Positions 4,832-51,757 of a stretch of DNA of 64,000 bases are shown here, one piece after another; positions within the stretch are counted from its first letter, which is position 1, and each line of letters starts with the position of its first letter. The translations under genes and the position numbers were made by a program. Where the stretch lies: positions 140,455 through 204,454 of the IMG/VR virus record IMGVR_UViG_3300044646_001937. The stretch is one strand, 5' to 3'. The notes beneath the pieces are model-generated. The model saw nothing but the letters and a program-made list of their open reading frames with translations, searched no databases and had not been told where the DNA came from.

Positions 4832-5254
4832 ATGGCAGACTTATTTCAATTTGAAACACCAGCAGCAAGAGCTCCATTAACAGCCGACAAGGCCACCATC
4901 CAGTGGGGTGGAGTTATTGCAGGCGCGATTCAGGTAAGCATCACCTATGCACAGCAGATTAACCGTCGCCGCACAATTGGCAACAAGTCCGCAGCAATCT
5001 GGGGATCCCAGCCCAGCGGACAGGTTAACATCCAAAGACTTCTAACCTCCGACGCTGGAGCACTCACCAGCGCCCCAGGCTGGAGCGGCTGTAACCCAGG
5101 CACAGTAACCCTGTCACTTGGCGGATGCGCTGGCGGAGGCCCAACCTACACAGCTACCAGTGCAGTTGTTTCTCAATTCTCAGTGTCCGCTGAAGCAGAA
5201 AGCCTCACAGTCATGGACAATGTGGTGATCGAGTTCATGCAGTTGTCTGCTTAA
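4832..5254 (+). CDS. Tail tube protein
   Basis: 140 aa, beta-rich, after the sheath, with its own promoter and a 3' hairpin. Strong C-ending codon bias suggests a highly expressed gene. Size fits Hcp/tube-fold proteins. Confidence 0.7.
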   Translation: MADLFQFETPAARAPLTADKATIQWGGVIAGAIQVSITYAQQINRRRTIGNKSAAIWGSQPSGQVNIQRLLTSDAGALTSAPGWSGCNPGTVTLSLGGCAGGGPTYTATSAVVSQFSVSAEAESLTVMDNVVIEFMQLSA

Positions 5255-5348: not shown

Positions 5349-7844
5349 ATGAGTATCAGGCAAAACCCATTACCTTCAGATCATCCAAATTTTAATACTC
5401 CGTCTAAAGTATTTGTAGGTGAAATCATTACATCATGCTCAGGCTCGCACGCCATCACAGTAGCAAGATCTAAGCACGGCGGAGCAAAATCAGCCGACGG
5501 CGGATACATGATGCAGGGAACATTGGCCACGTCAGTAATGGCTTCTATATTTGGATTTAGAGAGTCAGCACCTCCACAACCAGGAACACAGGTTGTATGC
5601 TTAGAAGAGTCTGCAAGTCATTGCTATATTTTAGGTATGCTACCCAAGCAAAACCCCAACCTGGACAATATGCCCAATAGGGCCGCTCTTGGGGCAGGTA
5701 ACGCCCTAGAAGACAGCGCCAATAGGAAGGGACATGAAAAATATACACCAAGGATATATGACAACAGAAGACCTACAGACGCGGTAGATGGTGAGCATGT
5801 TGTCAGTAATGAGTTTGGGGTTTTGCTTGGGCTGTATCAGCAGTTAGCTAATCTGAAAGCATCAGAGCTAGCGCAAGTGCAGTGCTTCCTTTTGGATGAT
5901 CTTGTGCGTGTGATCAGTCATAATTTTCAACACTATACAGCTCTTGGCGAATATAATATATATCATGACGGTAAAGCATTAATGGCCGAATTTGGAGCCA
6001 CACACAAGACCTCAGAAGCATATGGAAAACCCGCTGTAAACTCAGACTCCTCTTCTGCAACATTCACGAAAACAGGAACGCATACTGCAGATGATGAAAA
6101 TGACTTTTATAAAATCTCAGGAGATGAGCGAATAAAAGCAATTGAGCGCTTTAAATGGTTTCTTGGTACTGTGGGAGATTTTTTGCATGTATTCATGGTT
6201 AGACCTGATCCGCAAGAATCAAGAGTTTTAGATCCGACTAAAAAACCAAACAAACCAGACACAGGGTTATGTGATTTGCATATAGGTACTGACGGAGGAC
6301 TGCATTTACGTAGTGTAAAAGAAGTATTTATTGAAAAAACTAATTGGATTAGGGTACCGCTGAGAGTGGCTGCTCCGGATGATGAAGCTGGAGACGACGC
6401 AGCTAAAATAAAGTATAAAGAGAAAGAGCTTTTTAAGTTTGATAATGAAATTATTGCAACACATAACCCTATTAGGTACGCGTTACAGATAAGGGACTAT
6501 GTAGCTTATGTAAACGAGAAGCTTAATTATGAGAATTTTAAAAAACATGAAAAAGATTTTTATGTAAACGATGAATTAAGCAAAGAAGAAGCACTTAATA
6601 GGATAGGTAAAGTAGATCAAGAAACTTCTCTTAAGCTGAGCGATTATAAACTTAGAACTGCTGGAATATATCTAATGCCAAATGGAGGCATAACAATTAG
6701 AGATGCATGGAATTCAGCAATAATTATGGAGGGTGGTAACGTTTATATACAGCCAGCAAAAGATCTTATAACTCAACCTTTAAGAAGTATGGTTGTAAAG
6801 GCAGGCAAAAACATAAACATGTCTTGCCGCAAACATATAGATCTCTCCTCAAGCGATGAAGGAATGAGAATCAAGACACACAAGTCTCAATATCTATATA
6901 GTCATGAAGGAGGCGTTATTCTTGAAGCAAATGCTGAAAAAGACGTAGCCTATGCGCCTATACCCTCAAAAGGCGCCTTACAGCAAGTTGGAGGAATCGT
7001 ACTTAAATCTAGTTTGGGTATATACAACTATGCTGAAAAAAACATAGTGAACTTTGCTAAAGGAAAAATGCTGCTCCAGTCCTTAGACAATATGGATATC
7101 ACTGCAGGTTTTGAGGATGATAAAGCCAACAAAACCGCTAATAAGCCCATCAAACCCAAAAAAAATAACTCTAAGGAATCTTTAGCTACAGACAAAAAAG
7201 ATGAATCTTCAACTACAAACAAAAAAGCCGCAACTCGAAAAAAACAAGCAAGCATCACAGTATATAGCCAGAACAATATGACAGTTCTGGCGGACAAGTC
7301 TATGCTCCTACACTCAAAGGAATTAGCCACCATGGTATCAGACAAGCAAATGATATTGGCCGGCGCAGCCGCAACACTGCTTGGAGAGAAAGGCGATTCA
7401 ATTTCTACTGAAGGCGTTATAGAAACTGAAAAGATGGTAAAAGATATATTTAAAAAACCAAGAGAGATTAAAAAAGAATTACTCAAACAAACAGTATTTG
7501 AAAAAGCCACTAATTTTGAAGCACTAGAGTTTAAGTTTCTTAACTCTAAAGAATACGGTAGTGACATAGACAAAGAAAAAGACCCGTTTCCTATTACATT
7601 AGCGCAGCAGGATAATTTGTTGACAAACTTATATAAACTAGAAGAATGGAAAGAGGAAAAGATTAACGAGTCATATCCGTATCCTGGTAAAGATTTGTTT
7701 GAAAAGTTTTATTATATTACTCAAAAACCTAACAATTTACAGAAGCATCCCATTGATAAAGATTCACATAGTAAAGCAGACCCGCAGAATATTCCCGCAA
7801 CTATAACCCTGACATCACTAAGCAAATACAAAGTATTAAAATAA
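5349..7844 (+). CDS. Baseplate hub/central spike protein (gp5/VgrG-like)
   Basis: 831 aa. The N-terminal OB-fold-like part (PQPGTQVVC...YILG) is followed by repetitive short beta-strand segments (GGITIRDAWNSAIIMEGGNVYIQPAKDL...) typical of gp5/VgrG beta-helices. Confidence 0.65.
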   Translation: MSIRQNPLPSDHPNFNTPSKVFVGEIITSCSGSHAITVARSKHGGAKSADGGYMMQGTLATSVMASIFGFRESAPPQPGTQVVCLEESASHCYILGMLPKQNPNLDNMPNRAALGAGNALEDSANRKGHEKYTPRIYDNRRPTDAVDGEHVVSNEFGVLLGLYQQLANLKASELAQVQCFLLDDLVRVISHNFQHYTALGEYNIYHDGKALMAEFGATHKTSEAYGKPAVNSDSSSATFTKTGTHTADDENDFYKISGDERIKAIERFKWFLGTVGDFLHVFMVRPDPQESRVLDPTKKPNKPDTGLCDLHIGTDGGLHLRSVKEVFIEKTNWIRVPLRVAAPDDEAGDDAAKIKYKEKELFKFDNEIIATHNPIRYALQIRDYVAYVNEKLNYENFKKHEKDFYVNDELSKEEALNRIGKVDQETSLKLSDYKLRTAGIYLMPNGGITIRDAWNSAIIMEGGNVYIQPAKDLITQPLRSMVVKAGKNINMSCRKHIDLSSSDEGMRIKTHKSQYLYSHEGGVILEANAEKDVAYAPIPSKGALQQVGGIVLKSSLGIYNYAEKNIVNFAKGKMLLQSLDNMDITAGFEDDKANKTANKPIKPKKNNSKESLATDKKDESSTTNKKAATRKKQASITVYSQNNMTVLADKSMLLHSKELATMVSDKQMILAGAAATLLGEKGDSISTEGVIETEKMVKDIFKKPREIKKELLKQTVFEKATNFEALEFKFLNSKEYGSDIDKEKDPFPITLAQQDNLLTNLYKLEEWKEEKINESYPYPGKDLFEKFYYITQKPNNLQKHPIDKDSHSKADPQNIPATITLTSLSKYKVLK

Positions 7845-7849
7845 ATTAT

Positions 7850-8365
7850 ATGGAACCTCCACAACCCTTCAACACGTCAATTGAAATGAATAACGAAAAG
7901 CCTAAAAATTTGGAAATTACAGATAAAGAAAAAGAGCGGTTTTTCAAAAGTATTCTAGCCGATAAGCCCCACGAAGAAACTGTAACTTTGTTTGACAATA
8001 AATTAAGTGTAACCTTCAGATCGCTTACCGTCCAAGAAAACACTGACGTCGTTAATCAAATTATTAGAGATAAGGAAAACGGCATCGCTGTAGACAACGA
8101 TACATATTACATAACCATATCAGTATATCGTTTGGCACTATCCATGGTATCTGTAGACGGCAACACCTTTAGTTCAATAGTTAAGGAAGGGTTTTCGCCA
8201 TCGTTTGAAAAAGATACGTATGTACTAGCTAGGTCTAGACCAATTCTTGCCTGGGGTACTCCAAAACTATCGGTGTTTCTTGATGCGTTTCAAACATTTG
8301 AAAACAAAGCAATCAAGCTAGCCAGCGAGGTTCAAAACGCAAATTTTTGGAAAGCCAGCACGTAA
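7850..8365 (+). CDS. Tail assembly chaperone (gpG-like; short product)
   Basis: 171 aa upstream of the tape measure; VTFRSLTVQENTDV motif like myovirus chaperones; slippery site at its 3' end. Confidence 0.75.
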   Translation: MEPPQPFNTSIEMNNEKPKNLEITDKEKERFFKSILADKPHEETVTLFDNKLSVTFRSLTVQENTDVVNQIIRDKENGIAVDNDTYYITISVYRLALSMVSVDGNTFSSIVKEGFSPSFEKDTYVLARSRPILAWGTPKLSVFLDAFQTFENKAIKLASEVQNANFWKAST

Positions 8366-8400
8366 AATTGCTAACTTCAGGCTATTTACGTGGCTGGCTT
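8341..8400 (+). other. Programmed -1 ribosomal frameshift signal (slippery heptamer + stem-loop)
   Basis: A AAT TTT (8341-8347) in the 0 frame matches X XXY YYZ. A 15-bp stem (8352-8366 with 8385-8400, one bulged G) follows, and the -1 frame continues into ORF 8347-8697. Confidence 0.85.
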
Positions 8401-8697
8401 AATTTTGACTACATGCTTCCTTCGTCAAGACTGAGGGAAGAAATCATCCTAGCGCATCTACAGGATGAGTATATCTATGAACTGTTGAAGAGTAGGCTTT
8501 TCATAGAGACAGTATTGAGGGCTACCTTGGACCAGCGTACATCCTCAACGCTTGATCCTATATTTGAAGTATCTAGGCAGTTGATTGGATTAAAATTGCC
8601 TTCAGCTCTTCCAAAAGATACAATAAAAGAAGAAAAGTTATCAAAAAATGACCTTAAAGAATGGAAAGAGTTTCTAGATAAAGTAAACAAGAAGTAG
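8347..8697 (+). CDS. C-terminal extension of the tail assembly chaperone (gpT-like; makes a ~282-aa G-T fusion)
   Basis: -1 frame relative to 7850-8365, only a TTG start with no RBS, and it ends 3 nt before the tape measure ATG. Confidence 0.75.
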   Translation: MESQHVKLLTSGYLRGWLNFDYMLPSSRLREEIILAHLQDEYIYELLKSRLFIETVLRATLDQRTSSTLDPIFEVSRQLIGLKLPSALPKDTIKEEKLSKNDLKEWKEFLDKVNKK

Positions 8698-8700
8698 TAT

Positions 8701-11700
8701 ATGGCTGACCCAGGCAATTTTGACCCTTATGAGATGTACTCAAATTTTTCCCATATGGGGAGAAATTTTGGCAATCCATTGCTTAATTCTCTAGCCATGA
8801 TGGCGTTTGGGCATAATTATATGCCAGACACAGAGGAGAGTGGTCAGGACATGCATGAGGCTTTATTGCAGAGAGAAAGATCTGCAAATTTCATGCAGCT
8901 GCAGAGATCATCCTTTGCAAACAATGCACTTTTCCAGAAAATGGGTATATCTGGAAATATGGCAACAAGTGTCATGGCTGGTGTTATGTCATCACCAGAT
9001 AGCGCAGCATCTAAAATGATGTCAGGCGTTTTGGGCGGAAATCCCATGGCCGCATCTGCAAAAATATACTCAGGACTCACAGGCGCAAACGTGATGGGGG
9101 CCTTTGGCAGGACAGGGAACATCACAGCTGAAGAAACCGAAAGCGTGATGCAGTCTCTAGCCAAAAACTTCTACACCTCTCAAAACTATGAAGGACCTGA
9201 AGGCGTAAAAGAAGACATTAAAAAGAAAAGCAGACAATATATTACTGATCTAGCTGAACGAAAAGGAGGCTCTGGGCTTATTGAGTTAAAGGAAAAGGCT
9301 GGTATAGATTTAACTGACGGGAAAGGAGGTCTGGCCAAAGATTATAAAGAAAAAATTGCGAAGTTCGATATCACTGAAGGAGATGATGAGCGGGCTGTAA
9401 GACACTCTGCAAGTGATTTAAGAACTAAAAGCAACACACTTTCAGATAAAATAAGCAAGGCAACTAAAGAGGGTGATGAGAAGCTAAAAAAGAAACTTGA
9501 AGAATCTATAGAAAAAGATCTCAAGGATAACTTTAAAATGGCTAAGGATGAAATTGATAAGCAGTACAAAAAGAATGGAAAGCTGGATTTATCAAAACTA
9601 GAAAAAGATGCAAAAGATTCTTTTTCGCAAACATCCCCGCTTGAAGGTATGCGTAAAGAGGCGGAAGCGGCCAAAACAGCTGGATCTAGAATTACTGGAT
9701 TTGATTTTGCGAAATCTAGAGGGTTTAAACTAGAAGACATTACCTCAGGTTTTACAAAAGCCGCAGAACTCAGAATGCTTGGAGATAGTAGAAGCATGAC
9801 TCCGACCCAGGCAATGGACAAGTTTTCCAAAAACGCAGGAGGGGCAATGGATGCAGCTAGAGGTATATTTGGAAACAGGTCAGGCGGAGAATTAATGGAA
9901 AAGATTTCGCAATTTGCAGGATCAAATGTGGATTTAAGCACAAAAGGAGGCAGCGCCGAGATTGAGGGACTATTACGAAAAACAAATGCTACAGCTAGGG
10001 TAGCCGGAGTCAGTATAAAAACAATGTTGGCTATCATTGATTCTGCAAAACAATTGGCCGCAAATAATCCAGCACTGCAACATATGAGCAGCTCAGCAGC
10101 TGTAGAAACGTCACTACAGGCAGTCAAGGGTGCTGCTCAGATGGGTAAGATGATGACTGGTACGGAATTCAGGCAGGCAGGAGGAACACAGGGGCTATCC
10201 TCACAAGCAATCCAAGAGTCGCAAGCTTTTTCACAGTCTGAGTTAGGACAGAGTACATACGCCTTATTAGCGGCATCAAAAGGTACAGATGCTGAAGACT
10301 TCGTTAAGGACCTGGTTAAGAATGGTAAACTCACTGCCCAATATTTAAATAATGGAGGTATTGCTGAGATCGCCAAGAAAATGGGTAAATCGGAAATGGA
10401 AGTTATAAATCTTTCGCAGAACAGGCTGCTGTCAGAGTCGGGCATGAAAGATGACGACAATACTAAAATTGTTTCTGAAGGCGCAGGAAAGACAGGCGTA
10501 GAATCTATGTTTGACTATCTGGCTAAATATGGAAAAGGATACTCCAAAGAAGATTTAGAAAAAAAATATAAAGAAGAGTATTTGGCTAAAGGTAAATCTG
10601 TGAGTGATTTTAAAAGAGAAGTGTTGATGCCTAAGCTTGGAAGAACTAAACAAGGTATGGAGCTGGCGCGTACATACGATTTCAGTATCACCAAACACAT
10701 GCTCGAGTCTGCTATGACTCCTGAGGAAAAAGCAGCAATGGACAAAGAAATCAAGCAGGAGACAGCTAAATCTGCGGAAGTAGCCAAACAGAATGCAGGT
10801 AGAAATGCTCCAATGCTTACGCAAATTATGCAGGGTATAGCTGCTGGAGATAAAAAATTTGATAAGTATGATATAGATGCAGCCAGGGAAGAAATGTCGA
10901 AAATTTTTGCAACAGGAGGCAAAAAGCGAGACGATGTGACTGCCGCAGCAATGCTTAAAGCTGAAGACGCTGGCGAGGTATTAGTGAAGGAGATTTCAAG
11001 CGACCAAAGAATGCCTATGAAGAGATCCGCCCAGCTACTGAGTATAGTGATGGCAGGCAAAAAGCGTGAACTTGAAAGTCAGGGAGACACCGAAGAGGCC
11101 GCAAAGCTGGACACTAATATTACAGAACAAGATATTTCAGAGCTTAGAAAACAAGGATCTGCAGGTAAGTATAATAACAACAACCAAGCCATGAGTGCTC
11201 TTGAGCGCCTTGAAGCTAAACCTGACAACGAATTAACTCAACCTGAGCGTGAAGAAAAAACAAAACTGCAGAGATTGCGTAAAACAGGGATATTGCAAAA
11301 CGCCGAAGCTTATGAACATCTAAAAAAGGGCGACACCTCTGCAGCCATTAGGTCTGTTGGTCAAGCGGCTGTAGAAGATAATCAAAAAGCAAAAGCCAAA
11401 GACGATCTTGTTCCTAAAAATCAATCACCTCAATTACAGGCTTCTATGAAAGAAGCTGCAGAGGCTGGTAAAAAAATAATAGATCAGACCACCAAAAAGG
11501 GAGGCATTCTAAGTTTTGAGGAAGAAAAAATAGCTGAAGATGTTAATAAAGTAACTGAAGCGAACAGAAAGTCACTGATTGAGGCTGGTAGAGTAGATGA
11601 AGCCAGAGGACTTGGTAAAGTAACCAACCAGGAGCTGGAAGACCTAACTAAACGCGGCAAAGATGTTCTGGGCGGCATGACTGCTGTGGAGGCGGAAAAT

Positions 11701-12312
11701 GAGTTAGAAAAACTAGAGCACGACGACGCAAAAGGTAAGTTGGACGAAGCATCTAAAGAAAAATTAAAATTGCTGAGAACAACCAGAAAGATGGGAGGTT
11801 TCTCAAGTCAAAAGGCCTTTGAGGGAATGACTTCAGGCAAACGTGAGCAGGTGGCGATGGGTAGCCTAGAGGCATCAAAAGCTATTCAAAACAAAGTTGC
11901 TTTTGATAGTCAAAAAGCAAACATAGACGAAAAGCTATCAAAAGATTTAGATAAGTACGAACAAAGCAAAGGCATCAGCGCCGAAGGAAAGGCAGCAATA
12001 GCTGAAGCTCGACAGGCCTATACTGTAAATGGCAAGATTGACTTTGACAAGATGCGCAAAGATCAGGCTTCTGGAGAAGGGATTTTTAAAGGAAATCAAA
12101 AGAAATTTGAAGCTCTTGGAGGGTTGCTCCAAGGATCATCAAAACAAATTGAAGAAGCCAAAGCGCAAACCATCGCTAAAAACGAGCAGACTGGAGCTGA
12201 CCCCATGAAACAGGCTCTGGACGCTTTAAAAGAAATGATAGGTTTGCTAAAAAGCGGCGGAGGTATAGGTGACAAATTAAGCGATTTAGCAAAAGCAATA
12301 GCACACATATAA
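8701..12312 (+). CDS. Tape measure protein
   Basis: 1203 aa, alpha-helical, rich in A/K/E/G/M, directly after the chaperone pair. Confidence 0.8.
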   Translation: MADPGNFDPYEMYSNFSHMGRNFGNPLLNSLAMMAFGHNYMPDTEESGQDMHEALLQRERSANFMQLQRSSFANNALFQKMGISGNMATSVMAGVMSSPDSAASKMMSGVLGGNPMAASAKIYSGLTGANVMGAFGRTGNITAEETESVMQSLAKNFYTSQNYEGPEGVKEDIKKKSRQYITDLAERKGGSGLIELKEKAGIDLTDGKGGLAKDYKEKIAKFDITEGDDERAVRHSASDLRTKSNTLSDKISKATKEGDEKLKKKLEESIEKDLKDNFKMAKDEIDKQYKKNGKLDLSKLEKDAKDSFSQTSPLEGMRKEAEAAKTAGSRITGFDFAKSRGFKLEDITSGFTKAAELRMLGDSRSMTPTQAMDKFSKNAGGAMDAARGIFGNRSGGELMEKISQFAGSNVDLSTKGGSAEIEGLLRKTNATARVAGVSIKTMLAIIDSAKQLAANNPALQHMSSSAAVETSLQAVKGAAQMGKMMTGTEFRQAGGTQGLSSQAIQESQAFSQSELGQSTYALLAASKGTDAEDFVKDLVKNGKLTAQYLNNGGIAEIAKKMGKSEMEVINLSQNRLLSESGMKDDDNTKIVSEGAGKTGVESMFDYLAKYGKGYSKEDLEKKYKEEYLAKGKSVSDFKREVLMPKLGRTKQGMELARTYDFSITKHMLESAMTPEEKAAMDKEIKQETAKSAEVAKQNAGRNAPMLTQIMQGIAAGDKKFDKYDIDAAREEMSKIFATGGKKRDDVTAAAMLKAEDAGEVLVKEISSDQRMPMKRSAQLLSIVMAGKKRELESQGDTEEAAKLDTNITEQDISELRKQGSAGKYNNNNQAMSALERLEAKPDNELTQPEREEKTKLQRLRKTGILQNAEAYEHLKKGDTSAAIRSVGQAAVEDNQKAKAKDDLVPKNQSPQLQASMKEAAEAGKKIIDQTTKKGGILSFEEEKIAEDVNKVTEANRKSLIEAGRVDEARGLGKVTNQELEDLTKRGKDVLGGMTAVEAENELEKLEHDDAKGKLDEASKEKLKLLRTTRKMGGFSSQKAFEGMTSGKREQVAMGSLEASKAIQNKVAFDSQKANIDEKLSKDLDKYEQSKGISAEGKAAIAEARQAYTVNGKIDFDKMRKDQASGEGIFKGNQKKFEALGGLLQGSSKQIEEAKAQTIAKNEQTGADPMKQALDALKEMIGLLKSGGGIGDKLSDLAKAIAHI

Positions 12313-15292: not shown

Positions 15293-15925
15293 ATGAATGA
15301 CGTAGAACAGATGATTAAGGACAACAAGAAGTTGATTGAACTGGAAGTGAGTAGATATGCTACTAACCTACCGAAGATAACTGTACAGCTAGAAGCCTAT
15401 AAGCTAGCCAGAGAGGCAGCCAAAACATATAGCCCCGCCTCTGGATTTAAATTTAGCACGCATCTAGTGAACAGTCTTAAAAAACTATCAAGACTTTCCA
15501 CGCAATATGGTAACGTAGTGAGAATTCCTGAGAATACTCAGTTTGGTATAAATAAACTGCAGAAACTTGAAAAGGATCTGGAGCACACTCTAGGTAGAGC
15601 ACCAACCACAGATGAGCTAAGCCATCACTCAGGAATGTCCATGAACGCTATAGTTAATACGCTAGGCAGCAAAAAGATAAGCTCAGGTATATCCTCTCTT
15701 TTTGAAAGCCCTACACTGTTTGACAGTAACAATGACGAATGGGTGCATTTCGTATATCACGATCTGAGCGACAAAGATAAATTAATTTTTGAACATAAGA
15801 CAGGATTTGGTGGAAAGCCTGTGATGGACAATTCGTCACTGGCCAAGAAATTAAATTTGTCTACCAGTACTTTAAGTAATAGAATTAAGATGATAAATAA
15901 TACATTAGCGAAAGGATGGAAATAA
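15293..15925 (+). CDS. Sigma-70 family RNA polymerase sigma factor
   Basis: Region 2 (AAKTYSPASGFKFSTHL...VVRIP), region 3 (LGRAPTTDELS) and region 4 HTH (LSDKDKLIF...SLAKKLNLSTSTLSNR) are all present in 210 aa. Confidence 0.82.
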   Translation: MNDVEQMIKDNKKLIELEVSRYATNLPKITVQLEAYKLAREAAKTYSPASGFKFSTHLVNSLKKLSRLSTQYGNVVRIPENTQFGINKLQKLEKDLEHTLGRAPTTDELSHHSGMSMNAIVNTLGSKKISSGISSLFESPTLFDSNNDEWVHFVYHDLSDKDKLIFEHKTGFGGKPVMDNSSLAKKLNLSTSTLSNRIKMINNTLAKGWK

Positions 15926-16344: not shown

Positions 16345-16824
16345 ATGCCGATCAGCTCTATCACCTCAAATTACATAGACAGAAAAAAAGACATTAGTAT
16401 ATTTCAATATCCTAATGCTCTAGCTATTGGAGAGCAGACAGTGGCACCTAAGTTTGGTAAAATTTCCAGATACTGTACTGGAGTACAAAAGCTGATCCAA
16501 AATTATGCTGTGATGCTTCTCACCAATATAGGTTCTCAACCAAATTACCCCACCTTTGGCACAAATTTAATGGGCAAACTTAATGCAGGAATTTCACCTG
16601 TAGACAAACTTGCAGCATCTCAGCTTTTTGAATTAGCTAGTTATGAGACAGTATCAGCGTTAAAAAGCTACCAGCATTATCGCACAGACATTCCAGACGA
16701 TGAGCTCATTGTTGACGCCACATTGACTGATATAGCTCTCCAGGGAGGCTTTGCAGCTTTCGAAGTAACAATAACAACCCAAGCCGGTGATGCGGTTGAG
16801 TTCGTAGTCCCATTACCTAAATAA
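16345..16824 (+). CDS. Baseplate wedge protein, gp25/gpW-like
   Basis: GVQKLIQ...LLTNIGSQPNYPTFGTNL motif; 159 aa directly before the baseplate J-like gene. Confidence 0.72.
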   Translation: MPISSITSNYIDRKKDISIFQYPNALAIGEQTVAPKFGKISRYCTGVQKLIQNYAVMLLTNIGSQPNYPTFGTNLMGKLNAGISPVDKLAASQLFELASYETVSALKSYQHYRTDIPDDELIVDATLTDIALQGGFAAFEVTITTQAGDAVEFVVPLPK

Positions 16825-16829
16825 ATATT

Positions 16830-18452
16830 ATGGCCGAAAACATAGAAGCAACAGTAGAGCGCCTCACAGCCTTCATAGAGCAGAACTACGCCGACGTAGA
16901 AGCAGGACCAGGGTCAGTCATCAGCGAGCTACTAATAAAGTTGGCTGCTACATTACACAATGAGCAGTACAATCTTATTACACAACTAGAACAGGGAAAT
17001 ACATTTTTAAAAGTAGCCGAATCGACTGAAGACACATATTCCCCGATAATTGACCAGCTGGCGTCAAACTATAACACAGCCAGAAACGCAGGTATTAAGG
17101 TCAAAGGCAGAATCAAGGTAACTATTGACGATGATAATGAATACAATTTTACAGCACGTCAGATCCAGTTTATTCAACCCAGCTTAAACCTTAGATATTT
17201 CCTGACAACAGATGCTCGTGTAAGATTATCTCCATCTCCAACACTAGCTGAAACGCAGTTGTATCGCGATAACGGTCTTTACTATTTTATATTAGATGTA
17301 GAGGCAGAGTATGCAGGCGAGCAGTATCAGGCGTCTTCAGGAACTTTGTTTACTGTCGGAGAAAACAATTTTATCGATGGTTTTGTAAAAGCAGAAGCTT
17401 ATGGTAATTTCTCATCAGGTTTGTCACCAGAAACAGATAAAGAGTTGGTAGCTAAAATAAAATATAATTTAGGTAACACCAGGTTTGATTCGCCTGCAGG
17501 TATAGCAAACAGGTTCAGCAGGGAATTTCCAGGCTTTCAATATCTCTCTGTATGTGGCGCAAACGATATAGAGATGACTAGGTCTAAACAAAACGCGCTA
17601 GGCATATCAACATTCGGTAAGGCTGACGTGTATGTAAGGTCAAGCATTGGGCCGCAAGTAATGCACCTTAAGAAGCAGGCCACAAAAACTGCAGAAAACA
17701 CATGGACTATTGATATGTTGAATCATGAAGTTCCAGGCTTTTACAATATTGTTAGTATTATTCCTGATGTGGTAGACATGTCACTGGGTGGAACATTGCT
17801 ACAGAAAACGCCTATAGCCTACAGTTACGCATACTATCCTGAAAAAAGAAATAACGAGTTGTATAGTGTCATAGATGCAAGGTTTACAAAATATCAAACA
17901 GCAACCGTCACACTTGATTATGCCGACCCTGGTAATGCAGAAATAGGAAGCAATGCTTATTTCTTACTGCAGGTTAACTATCAACCTAATATTGCGGAAA
18001 TGCAAGACCTGCTATTGTCTGACACTGAAAGATTAGCTTGCGCAGACTATCTTGTAAAAGCAGTGATTCCATGTATGGTTTCACTGAATATTCAGCTACT
18101 TAAGAAAAGACCAACAGACACGTTTGAGTCACTGAATATTCAGCAGCTTAAAAAAGATATTTTCTTATATATTAACACAATTCCATTTGGAGAAGAATTG
18201 CATGCATCTAGAATAGTAGATATATGTCATAATTACGACATCAGACGAGTAGATCTACCGATAAGCATGAAGGGTGTCATCCTATGTCCAGACGGAACCA
18301 GCCTACCTATTTCAGGCAATGACGCGCTAACCATCCCAAATAATCTGGCTAAGGGGGTAACTCCAAAAACAACAGCTTATTTCATAGACTATTACAGAAC
18401 AGAAAACGGGCAGATCAACCCTATTGATAACATAGGCTTAAATATTGTTTAA
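16830..18452 (+). CDS. Baseplate J-like wedge protein (gp6-like)
   Basis: N-terminal GPGSVISELLIK, ARNAGIKVKGRIKV and SGLSPETDKELVAKI...GKADVYV motifs match baseplate J family patterns. Confidence 0.8.
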   Translation: MAENIEATVERLTAFIEQNYADVEAGPGSVISELLIKLAATLHNEQYNLITQLEQGNTFLKVAESTEDTYSPIIDQLASNYNTARNAGIKVKGRIKVTIDDDNEYNFTARQIQFIQPSLNLRYFLTTDARVRLSPSPTLAETQLYRDNGLYYFILDVEAEYAGEQYQASSGTLFTVGENNFIDGFVKAEAYGNFSSGLSPETDKELVAKIKYNLGNTRFDSPAGIANRFSREFPGFQYLSVCGANDIEMTRSKQNALGISTFGKADVYVRSSIGPQVMHLKKQATKTAENTWTIDMLNHEVPGFYNIVSIIPDVVDMSLGGTLLQKTPIAYSYAYYPEKRNNELYSVIDARFTKYQTATVTLDYADPGNAEIGSNAYFLLQVNYQPNIAEMQDLLLSDTERLACADYLVKAVIPCMVSLNIQLLKKRPTDTFESLNIQQLKKDIFLYINTIPFGEELHASRIVDICHNYDIRRVDLPISMKGVILCPDGTSLPISGNDALTIPNNLAKGVTPKTTAYFIDYYRTENGQINPIDNIGLNIV

Positions 18453-51358: not shown

Positions 51359-51757
51359 GGGGGTGAACCGGTTTCGACTGTGTATGAGCCCCTGCAGCAG
51401 CATGTAGAGGAAGCCTGGTTGGCCTCTTAAAAAATCTAGGTAAAATAAACGCAAAGTCTGAATTTGACTTCGCCCCTTCGGTAGCAGAAGCGGATGCATT
51501 CCTCAAGGCCGCCGGCTTTGTGGATGCTGAGCTCCTCGCTGCATAAGGTACAGACTGGATGCTATTAAAAGTCTGTAAATGTTAGTAGCTGGTGCTTGAA
51601 GAAAAGAATTGCCGCTCAAGCAGAACAAATAACAATTCAAGAGAATGCGTACAGTTTGTCTTCCGACGATACGCATTCTTACAAAAGGAAGGCTAAGCAT
51701 GTAGACGCTGTAGGATAAGTATACAGGACAGGGGTTCGACTCCCCTCACCTCCACCA
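51359..51757 (+). ncRNA. ssrA: tmRNA (transfer-messenger RNA), 399 nt
   Basis: 5' GGGGGTGAACCGGTTTCGAC and 3' GGACAGGGGTTCGACTCCCCTCACCTCCACCA with encoded CCA. 7-bp acceptor stem with G3-U70. Pseudoknot 1 is AGAGG/CCTCT + CCTGG/CTAGG, helix 2 is CCTGCAGC/GCTGTAGG. Tag ORF 51451-51546 ends LLAA-TAA. Confidence 0.95.

What the first reader, a model, noticed from the sequence alone, without database searches (positions are those of the whole stretch)
7850..8697. Programmed -1 frameshift with a strong stimulatory hairpin in the tail assembly chaperone
Seen: in-frame heptamer A AAT TTT (8341-8347) is followed 4 nt later by a 15-bp stem (AAGCCAGCACGTAAA / TTTACGTgGCTGGCTT) that contains the 0-frame TAA. 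The -1 frame stays open for 116 codons up to the tape measure. Established: G/GT chaperone frameshifts upstream of tape measure genes occur in lambda, P2 and many tailed phages. Inference: 171-aa and ~282-aa products, with a retrovirus-like heptamer-plus-hairpin layout. Gene callers would split this into two genes.
Basis: partly seen in the sequence, partly recalled or inferred. Interest (0 to 1): 0.75.

Follow-up and report, generated by a model that had tools for sequence, protein, structure and literature searches.

The report
Frameshift in phage tail chaperone gene
A 204-kb freshwater phage makes its tail assembly chaperone as a short and a long protein by a programmed -1 ribosomal frameshift; this is an ordinary kind of phage signal, but here it is unusually complete and well conserved.

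Summary
The in-frame heptamer A_AAU_UUU lies at 8341-8347. A bulged hairpin follows 4-5 nt later and contains the 0-frame TAA. The -1 frame stays open for 116 codons and ends 3 nt before the next gene.

The context fits a contractile-tail module: sheath, tube, gp5/VgrG-like spike, this gene pair, a 1203-aa tape-measure-like protein, then the baseplate. The 171-aa product models confidently. Its best solved-structure matches are the HK97 tail assembly chaperone and YqbN.

Across 35 distinct related loci:
- The U_UUU core never changes.
- The -1 frame is always open for 110-161 codons and is closed 0-13 codons upstream of the site.
- The T peptide is conserved from the first codon after the site.
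- A 12-bp bulged stem is paired in 90.5% of cells, against 24-40% in slid controls.

Synonymous sites are saturated across the gene but frozen at the heptamer, at one Gly codon in the 3' arm, and at a GAG codon. That GAG forms a Shine-Dalgarno-like GAGGU 9-10 nt upstream of the heptamer. The layout is therefore three-part like E. coli dnaX, not specifically retrovirus-like.

Verdict: a real G/GT-type -1 frameshift and a new member of a known kind. The protein family has no Pfam or PHROG model. Efficiency and the actual product are untested. Interest is moderate to low.

The parts
7850..8365 (+). G ORF (0 frame), 171 aa, the short tail assembly chaperone product; it ends at TAA 8363-8365.
   Evidence: ORF list. 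94 homologues, nearly all 171 aa. AlphaFold2 model: pLDDT 88.7, pTM 0.81. Best PDB matches are the HK97 tail assembly chaperone 2ob9 (Z 6.9) and YqbN 3klu (Z 6.8). The BFVD top hit is annotated as a tail assembly chaperone.
8327..8331 (+). Shine-Dalgarno-like GAGGU, 9-10 nt upstream of the heptamer; the candidate 5' stimulator.
   Evidence: GAGG is present in 22 of 23 close loci. The Glu codon is GAG in 22 of 22 and never GAA, whereas other conserved Glu codons split about evenly. The 9-14 nt spacing rule for -1 frameshifting is from PMC5009743.
8341..8347 (+). Slippery heptamer A_AAU_UUU in the 0 frame.
   Evidence: Sequence. Identical in 21 of 23 close loci. The variants A_AGU_UUU, G_GAU_UUU, G_GGU_UUU and AGAUUUU all keep U_UUU. 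The first A is kept although the codon that carries it encodes several different residues (GCA, CCA, GTA, AGA, CAA, AAA, CTA). AAT is used 21 of 21 times and TTT 23 of 23.
8353..8364 (+). 5' arm of the conserved 12-bp stem; it contains the first two bases of the 0-frame stop TAA 8363-8365.
8387..8399 (+). 3' arm of the conserved stem, with G8392 bulged; it is coded only in the -1 frame (L-R-G-W-L).
   Evidence: 90.5% of 420 cells are paired in 35 distinct sequences, against 24-40% for slid partners. Gly codon 8392-8394 is GGC in 22 of 23; the single GGT is compensated in the 5' arm (L032).
8347..8697 (+). T ORF (-1 frame), 116 codons, read after the shift to give a 282-aa G-T fusion; stop TAG 8695-8697.
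   Evidence: The -1 frame is open for 110-161 codons in all 35 distinct loci and ends at the start of the next gene. The peptide is conserved from its first residue, KFLESQRVK.LTEGYLRGWL.
8701..12312 (+). Downstream 1203-aa gene, the probable tape measure protein.
   Evidence: Low-complexity K/E/A/G-rich sequence. 43 of 100 nearest Atlas clusters carry tape-measure Pfam families, at scores of 0.85-0.86, which is a lead only. The position matches phage G gp183 'tapemeasure'.

Best explanation
Genes 7850-8365 and 8347-8697 are one recoded gene for the tail assembly chaperone of a contractile-tailed 204-kb phage.

Most ribosomes read the 0 frame and stop at TAA 8363-8365, making the 171-aa G protein. 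A fraction slip back one base while tRNA-Asn and tRNA-Phe occupy A_AAU_UUU (8341-8347). These ribosomes continue in the -1 frame to 8694 and make a 282-aa G-T fusion with the junction ...QNANF-LESQHVK.

Slippage is promoted from downstream by a 12-bp bulged hairpin that starts 5 nt after the heptamer. It is probably also promoted from upstream by pairing of GAGGU (8327-8331) with the 16S rRNA tail. This is the same three-part layout as E. coli dnaX.

By analogy with lambda gpG/gpGT and P2 E/E+E', G would coat the tape measure protein and the T part would recruit tube subunits.

Shown here: the sequence elements, their conservation, the chaperone-like fold, and the gene order. Inferred: that the fusion is made, its proportion, the stimulatory role of the hairpin and the SD-like element, and the binding partners.
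For: **Anatomy.**

**Context.**
- The sheath gene 1490-4315 matches phage G gp178, annotated as tail sheath.
- The tube gene is 4832-5254 and the gp5/VgrG-like spike is 5349-7844.
- The tape-measure-like gene is 8701-12312, and baseplate gp25- and gp6-like genes lie at 16345-18452.
- Phage G has the same order and an annotated joined chaperone, gp181/gp182.

**Fold.** The G model (pLDDT 88.7) best matches 2ob9 (HK97 tail assembly chaperone, Z 6.9) and 3klu (YqbN, Z 6.8) among 48,161 chains; the next hit scores 4.6. BFVD and AFDB hits are named tail assembly chaperone or XkdN-like.

**Conservation in 35 distinct loci.**
- The heptamer, or at least U_UUU, is always in frame.
- The -1 frame is open for 110-161 codons to the start of the next gene.
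- The -1 frame is closed 0-13 codons upstream; in four loci (L028, L030, L045, L051) the stop lies immediately before the heptamer, which limits the shift window to 22 nt.
- No ATG is conserved in the -1 ORF, and five loci have none at all.
- The T peptide is conserved from its first codon.

**RNA-level constraint.**
- The median normalised synonymous entropy across the gene is 0.84.
- It is 0 at the SD codon and the heptamer codons.
- It is 0.13 at the Gly codon in the 3' arm.
- It is 0.86 in the hairpin loop.

**Stem.**
- It is paired in 90.5% of cells against 24-40% for slid controls, and four pairs show changes on both sides.
- The hairpin is the most stable 50-nt window of the whole gene in 19 of 23 loci.
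- Distant loci L039, L053 and L054 have different arm sequences, and different T residues, yet still form a hairpin at the same distance.

**Literature.**
- A_AA.U_UU.U belongs to the H_HH.U_UU.Y class, which is efficient in E. coli.
- U_UU.Y is the second-best tetramer class (PMC4066793).
- An SD-like sequence acts on -1 frameshifting at 9-14 nt, and the dnaX stem has 11 bp (PMC5009743).
Against: - No protein or reporter data exist. The host is unknown, so tRNA pools and anti-SD use are assumed.
- True compensatory changes are few, because both arms are coding. Shuffle controls are only modestly exceeded for the covariation score (5 of 500).
- The 5' arm is dual-coded, so its conservation alone says nothing about RNA structure.
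- The SD-like element is absent from 8 of the 35 loci.
- TTG 8347 is conserved and could in principle act as a start codon.
- The T-part model has no fold match, and the T-tube complex prediction gave no answer.
- The tape-measure assignment rests on position, composition and weak Atlas leads.
Confidence: 0.88

Rival explanations
1. The frameshift is real but occurs on the heptamer alone, as in lambda G/GT. The hairpin and GAGG are by-products of overlapping protein-coding constraints (FWKAS in frame 0, ESQRV and LRGWL in frame -1) and do not stimulate slippage.
For: Both arms are coding, and the 5' arm is dual-coded. Only 4 of 12 pairs show changes on both sides. GAGG encodes a conserved Glu-Val and is missing in 8 of 35 loci.
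Against: The third base of the Gly codon in the 3' arm is a free synonymous site, yet it is C in 22 of 23 loci, and the one exception is compensated in the 5' arm. By contrast, the nearby Gly codon 8380-8382 uses all four bases. Loci L053, L054 and L039 changed the encoded residues and the arm sequences but kept a hairpin at the same distance. GAG is used 22 of 22 times, against roughly even use at other Glu codons. The hairpin is the most stable window of the gene in 19 of 23 loci.
Confidence: 0.08
2. These are two separate genes. T is translated on its own from TTG 8347 or from an internal start, with no frameshift.
For: TTG 8347-8349 is invariant. Gene callers report a separate downstream gene in some relatives.
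Against: No purine-rich SD lies 5-12 nt before TTG 8347; GAGG ends 16 nt upstream. The TTG sits 3 nt from a -22.7 kcal/mol hairpin. TTG is fixed anyway by the Phe-Trp codons. The first ATG in the -1 frame varies from codon 24 to 108 and is absent in five loci. The conserved T peptide begins at the shift site. The first A of the heptamer is kept through amino-acid changes, which a start codon would not require.
Confidence: 0.03
3. The frame change arises from transcriptional slippage on the A3T5 run, or from a sequencing or assembly indel or a pseudogene, rather than from ribosomal slippage.
For: The site contains a run of five T.
Against: Productive bacterial transcriptional slippage needs runs of about nine A or T (PMC5009743); here there are only three A and five T. 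An independent assembly has no indel across 7867-8697. The same two-frame arrangement recurs in 35 distinct loci from many samples.
Confidence: 0.01

Closest known systems
Lambda gpG/gpGT and the conserved G/GT tail chaperone frameshift of long-tailed phages (Levin 1993; Xu 2004; reviewed in PMC5009743)
   Same: Two overlapping ORFs lie immediately upstream of the tape measure gene. The shift is -1 on an X_XXY_YYZ heptamer near the end of the first ORF. The result is a short product and a fusion product.
   Different: The heptamer is different; lambda uses G_GGA_AAG (from my own knowledge). As far as I recall, lambda needs no downstream structure, whereas here a conserved hairpin and an SD-like element flank the site. 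There is no detectable sequence similarity.
Bacillus phage G gp181/gp182 (annotated joined tail assembly chaperone)
   Same: It is a very large contractile-tailed phage with the same gene order: sheath, structural genes, chaperone pair, tape measure. The G model matches the gp181 and gp182 models (E 4e-3 and 6e-3). The sheath proteins are weakly related.
   Different: Phage G shifts on A_AAA_AAC directly before TAG, and no GC-rich hairpin is evident in the next 130 nt.
E. coli dnaX gamma/tau -1 frameshift cassette
   Same: It has the same three parts: an SD-like sequence about 10 nt upstream, a heptamer, then a stem-loop of about 11-12 bp with an imperfection about 5-6 nt downstream (PMC5009743).
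   Different: dnaX uses A_AAA_AAG, and the shifted ribosome stops after one codon to give the shorter product. Here the shift gives the longer product. The protein is unrelated.
HK97 tail assembly chaperone (PDB 2ob9) and B. subtilis YqbN (PDB 3klu)
   Same: These are the best structural matches of the G model: Z 6.9 and 6.8, with 93 and 85 residues aligned.
   Different: Sequence identity is 6-9%, and Z is below the level at which the tool's authors regard a fold match as safe. G is about 60 residues longer.

Membership tests
G/GT-type tail assembly chaperone with programmed -1 frameshift | Two overlapping ORFs lie between the tail tube genes and the tape measure gene. | tested here: met
   Gene order is sheath, tube, spike, G, T, then a 1203-aa tape-measure-like gene. 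A gp5-like spike gene sits between tube and G, which is not the classical order.
G/GT-type tail assembly chaperone with programmed -1 frameshift | The second ORF is in the -1 frame, overlaps the end of the first, and has no start signal of its own. | tested here: met
   The frame was checked by reading the sequence. No ATG is conserved, and no SD lies at initiation distance from TTG 8347.
G/GT-type tail assembly chaperone with programmed -1 frameshift | An in-frame slippery heptamer lies in the overlap and is conserved in relatives. | tested here: met
   A_AAU_UUU is present in 21 of 23 close loci, and U_UUU in all 35.
G/GT-type tail assembly chaperone with programmed -1 frameshift | The first ORF has the tail assembly chaperone fold. 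| tested here: met
   The top two of 48,161 PDB chains are tail assembly chaperones (Z 6.9 and 6.8). BFVD and AFDB hits carry chaperone names. Foldseek against the PDB found nothing, so the support is moderate.
G/GT-type tail assembly chaperone with programmed -1 frameshift | A fusion protein is made at a set ratio; G binds the tape measure protein and T binds the tube protein. | not testable with these tools
   The complex prediction of T with the tube protein gave no answer. No expression data exist for this uncultured phage.
Curated tail assembly chaperone sequence families (Pfam, PHROGs) | A significant match to a family profile. | tested here: not met
   G, T and 56 diverse family members have no chaperone family hit.
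dnaX-type three-part -1 frameshift signal | An SD-like sequence lies 9-14 nt 5' of the shift site. | tested here: met
   GAGGU is at 8327-8331, 9-10 nt before 8341. It is conserved in 22 of 23 close loci with a frozen synonymous site. It is absent in 8 of 35 loci overall.
dnaX-type three-part -1 frameshift signal | A stable stem-loop lies about 5-7 nt 3' of the heptamer. | tested here: met
   A 12-bp bulged stem starts 5 nt downstream. Its energy is -16 to -28 kcal/mol across loci, and it is paired in 90.5% of cells.
dnaX-type three-part -1 frameshift signal | Each element measurably raises frameshifting. | not testable with these tools
   This requires reporter assays.

The most novel reading that the evidence does not exclude
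Because it combines an efficient heptamer with both a 5' SD-like element and a 3' hairpin, and in some relatives a stop codon directly after the heptamer, this cassette may drive frameshifting at tens of percent, as in dnaX, rather than the few percent seen in lambda. G-T would then be a major product. Together with the conserved promoter inside the T ORF, this would point to a different stoichiometric logic for tail assembly in this large, unannotated chaperone family of big freshwater myoviruses.
Probability: 0.25. Interest if true: 0.5.

Novelty: new member of a known kind. Interest (0 to 1): 0.35.

Why it matters
- **Annotation.** This corrects the annotation of a whole, previously unnamed chaperone family. 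It has at least 707 clusters at 50% identity and no Pfam or PHROG model. Gene callers split the gene or miss its second half.
- **A clean natural example.** The case shows a bacterial-type three-part frameshift signal whose parts stand out as islands of frozen synonymous sites. That makes it useful for training frameshift predictors and for comparative study of how heptamer, spacer, stem and stop codon co-vary.
- **No new mechanism.** It does not reveal a new mechanism.

Tried and rejected
- **Profile searches.** PHROGs and Pfam scans of G, T and six neighbours found nothing useful. A scan of 56 family members found no chaperone family.
- **PDB sequence search.** Searches with sheath, tube, spike and tape measure found nothing.
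- **Foldseek against the PDB.** The G model had no hit. Only the slower VIA-align wide search found the chaperone structures.
- **T part.** The model is helical (pLDDT 80) and has no significant fold match.
- **Complex prediction.** T with the tube protein gave no answer, so it is not evidence either way.
- **Rfam.** No family matched in 7600-9000.
- **tblastn of G against 50,697 phage records.** No match.
- **Laying reads.** Runs X1 and X2 laid no contigs despite holding all sampled words. The tool warns this can be a filter artefact.
- **Long-range pairing.** In the window, 8592-8601 is complementary to 8712-8721 over 10 bp. I considered this as a device coupling tape-measure translation to frameshifted ribosomes. 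I rejected it because most relatives lack the pairing.
- **A repeated regulatory motif.** The second island of frozen synonymous sites is not a repeated motif in the window. It is better explained as a promoter.
- **My own error.** My first promoter pattern search used a wrong spacer length. I corrected it.

Full report
**1. Observation**

The window is the last 64 kb of a 204,454-bp virus record with direct terminal repeats. I checked each claim by reading 7700-8900.

- ORF 7850-8365 (171 aa) ends with the codons GCA AAT TTT TGG AAA GCC AGC ACG TAA. A_AAT_TTT at 8341-8347 is therefore an in-frame X_XXY_YYZ heptamer.
- The -1 frame is open from 8347 to the TAG at 8695-8697, which is 116 codons. 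The next gene starts at 8701.
- The arms 8352-8366 and 8385-8400 pair, with G8392 bulged, and the 0-frame TAA lies in the 5' arm.
- Folding 8335-8420 gives -24.1 kcal/mol, z = -3.16.
- The predicted products are 171 aa and 282 aa, with the junction ...QNANF|LESQHVK.
- A contig from an unrelated study (run X3) covers 7867-8697 with two substitutions and no gap. The two-frame arrangement is therefore not an assembly error.

**2. What the gene is**

Profile searches were blank for G, T and their neighbours. Identity therefore rests on fold and position.

*Gene order*
- The 941-aa protein at 1490-4315 matches the tail sheath of Bacillus phage G (gp178) and structural proteins of roughly 180-kb Vibrio and Salmonella phages.
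- The nearest Atlas clusters of the 140-aa protein at 4832-5254 are tail tube families.
- The nearest Atlas clusters of the 831-aa protein at 5349-7844 are gp5, VgrG and baseplate-V spike families.
- The 1203-aa protein at 8701-12312 is a low-complexity K/E/A/G-rich protein. Tape-measure families are among its nearest clusters, which is a lead only.
- gp25-like and gp6-like baseplate genes follow at 16345-18452.
- Phage G has the same order, with an annotated joined chaperone (gp181/gp182) before its tape measure gene.

*Fold*
- An AlphaFold2 model of G built on 56 family members is confident (pLDDT 88.7, pTM 0.81).
- Among 48,161 representative PDB chains, its two best matches are the HK97 tail assembly chaperone (2ob9, Z 6.9) and YqbN (3klu, Z 6.8). 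The next hit scores 4.6.
- The best BFVD hit is annotated as a tail assembly chaperone (E 9e-6). Phage G gp181 and gp182 are also hit.
- AFDB clusters named tail assembly chaperone and XkdN-like appear as well.

I conclude that G is a tail assembly chaperone. It belongs to a family that curated libraries do not cover. The family is nevertheless large: 94 close homologues and 707 clusters at 50% identity with E of 0.001 or better.

**3. Is the frameshift signal conserved?**

I collected 35 distinct homologous loci from viral and metagenome contigs. One of the search patterns lay in the N-terminal half of G, so that set was not selected for the site.

- **Heptamer.** It is A_AAU_UUU in most loci. 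The exceptions are A_AGU_UUU, G_GAU_UUU, G_GGU_UUU (itself canonical) and AGAUUUU. All of them keep U_UUU.
- **First A.** The first A of the heptamer is the third base of a codon that encodes several different residues (GCA, CCA, GTA, AGA, CAA, AAA, CTA). It is A in 22 of 23 close loci.
- **Reading frames.** In every locus the -1 frame is open for 110-161 codons and stops at the start of the next gene. It is closed 0-13 codons upstream of the heptamer. In four loci (L028, L030, L045, L051) the -1 stop directly precedes the heptamer, which confines any shift to a 22-nt window.
- **T peptide.** It is conserved from its very first residues, KFLESQRVK.LTEGYLRGWL.
- **Alternative starts.** The first in-frame ATG wanders between codons 24 and 108 and is missing in five loci.
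- **C-terminal motif.** Across the wider family, the motif [N/D]-F-W, or a stop straight after the F, marks the same site.

**4. Is the RNA structure real, or a by-product of coding?**

Codon-level analysis of 23 close loci shows that synonymous sites are saturated across G and T, with a median normalised entropy of 0.84. A few islands stand out.

| Site | Result |
|---|---|
| Glu codon 8327-8329 | GAG in 22 of 22 |
| Heptamer codons | AAT 21 of 21; TTT 23 of 23 |
| Dual-coded overlap | frozen, as expected |
| Gly codon 8392-8394 (3' arm, read in one frame only) | GGC in 22 of 23 |
| Hairpin loop codons | entropy 0.86 |

The single GGT, in L032, is matched by G to A in the 5' arm. The neighbouring Gly codon 8380-8382 uses all four bases.

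Further points on the stem:
- The 12-bp stem (8353-8364 with 8387-8391 and 8393-8399) is paired in 90.5% of 420 cells in 35 sequences, against 24-40% when the partners are slid. Four pairs show changes on both sides. No shuffle out of 500 reaches the observed pairing, and 5 of 500 reach the covariation score.
- The hairpin is the most stable 50-nt window of the entire gene in 19 of 23 loci.
- In distant loci the arms differ in sequence. In L053 and L054 the T residues they encode also differ, yet a hairpin still begins 5-6 nt after the heptamer.
- In L038, L053 and L054 the 0-frame stop directly follows the heptamer.

**5. Mechanism**

- A_AA.U_UU.U belongs to the H_HH.U_UU.Y class, one of the efficient classes in E. 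coli. U_UU.Y is the second-best tetramer class (PMC4066793). This explains why relatives tolerate changes at the P-site codon.
- GAGGU ends 9-10 nt before the heptamer. That is within the 9-14 nt at which an internal SD-like sequence stimulates -1 shifting (PMC5009743).
- The stem is similar in size to the 11-bp dnaX stem.
- The layout therefore matches dnaX and IS elements.
- Functions of the products are inferred from lambda: G coats the tape measure protein and T recruits the tube protein (PMC5009743). I could not test this. The T model has no fold match, and the complex prediction gave no answer.

**6. Rivals**

- **Independent initiation at TTG 8347** is unlikely. There is no SD at initiation distance, the codon abuts the hairpin, and the first base of the heptamer is conserved for no reason related to coding.
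- **Transcriptional slippage** is unlikely on three A plus five T; productive cases use about nine.
- **The hairpin as a coding by-product** is argued against by the frozen single-frame synonymous site and by the sequence-divergent hairpins. Only mutagenesis can settle this.

**7. Novelty and score**

G/GT frameshifting is a textbook phenomenon, and thousands of joined chaperone genes are already annotated (PMC10885494). This is a new member.

What it adds:
- an unannotated chaperone family of large freshwater myoviruses;
- an unusually complete and well-conserved three-part signal;
- natural variation in heptamer, bulge position and stop placement.

Interest is 0.35.

**8. In passing**

A second island of frozen synonymous sites lies in T at 8590-8601. 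It turned out to be the -35 element of a sigma-70-like promoter, TTGCCT-17 nt-TACAAT (8596-8624). This promoter is kept, with a variable spacer, in 21 of 23 close loci and 10 of 13 distant loci. It lies 77 nt upstream of the tape measure start.

Noticed in passing
window 8590-8624 (+): A sigma-70-like promoter is embedded in the T ORF: an A/T-rich TTAAAA, a -35 TTGCCT (8596-8601), an exact 17-nt spacer of variable sequence, and a -10 TACAAT (8619-8624). Codon choice is frozen at both hexamers. The element is kept in 21 of 23 close loci and 10 of 13 distant loci. It lies 77 nt upstream of the tape measure ATG at 8701 and probably gives the tape measure and downstream tail genes their own transcript.
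   Followed up: yes
window 8592-8601 and 8712-8721: There is a 10-bp perfect complementarity between the promoter island in T and codons 4-7 of the tape measure gene (duplex -26.2 kcal/mol). Similar pairing occurs in L003 and more weakly in L001 and L019, but not in most relatives, so it is probably chance.
   Followed up: yes
L038:1995-2004; L053 and L054 at their heptamers: In some relatives the Trp codon after the heptamer is replaced by a stop (UUU_UAG or UUU_UAA). G then ends exactly at the shift site, a 'shifty stop' arrangement. About 17 of the 149 representative proteins also end in ...[N/D/S]F.
   Followed up: partly
window 8320-8326: AGCCAGC, the lower half of the hairpin's 5' arm, also occurs 27 nt upstream of that arm, overlapping the SD-like element. 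It could pair with the 3' arm as an alternative structure. It is present only in the window, and with one change in L013, so it is probably chance.
   Followed up: partly
window 51359-51757 (+): ARAGORN calls a tmRNA gene with a 31-residue tag peptide ending in ...LLAA. This is unusual cargo for a phage.
   Followed up: no
window 15293-15925 (+): A 210-aa protein carries sigma-70 region 3 and matches the PHROG RNA polymerase sigma factor family. It sits in the middle of the tail and baseplate module.
   Followed up: no
window 23810-46788 (+): Three consecutive giant ORFs of 2237, 1773 and 3616 aa lie downstream of the baseplate genes. They were not analysed.
   Followed up: no
window 5349-7844 (+): A gp5/VgrG-like spike gene (831 aa) sits between the tube gene and the chaperone gene, here and in relatives (769-888 aa in L038, L040, L041). 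This is an unusual position for the central spike.
   Followed up: partly
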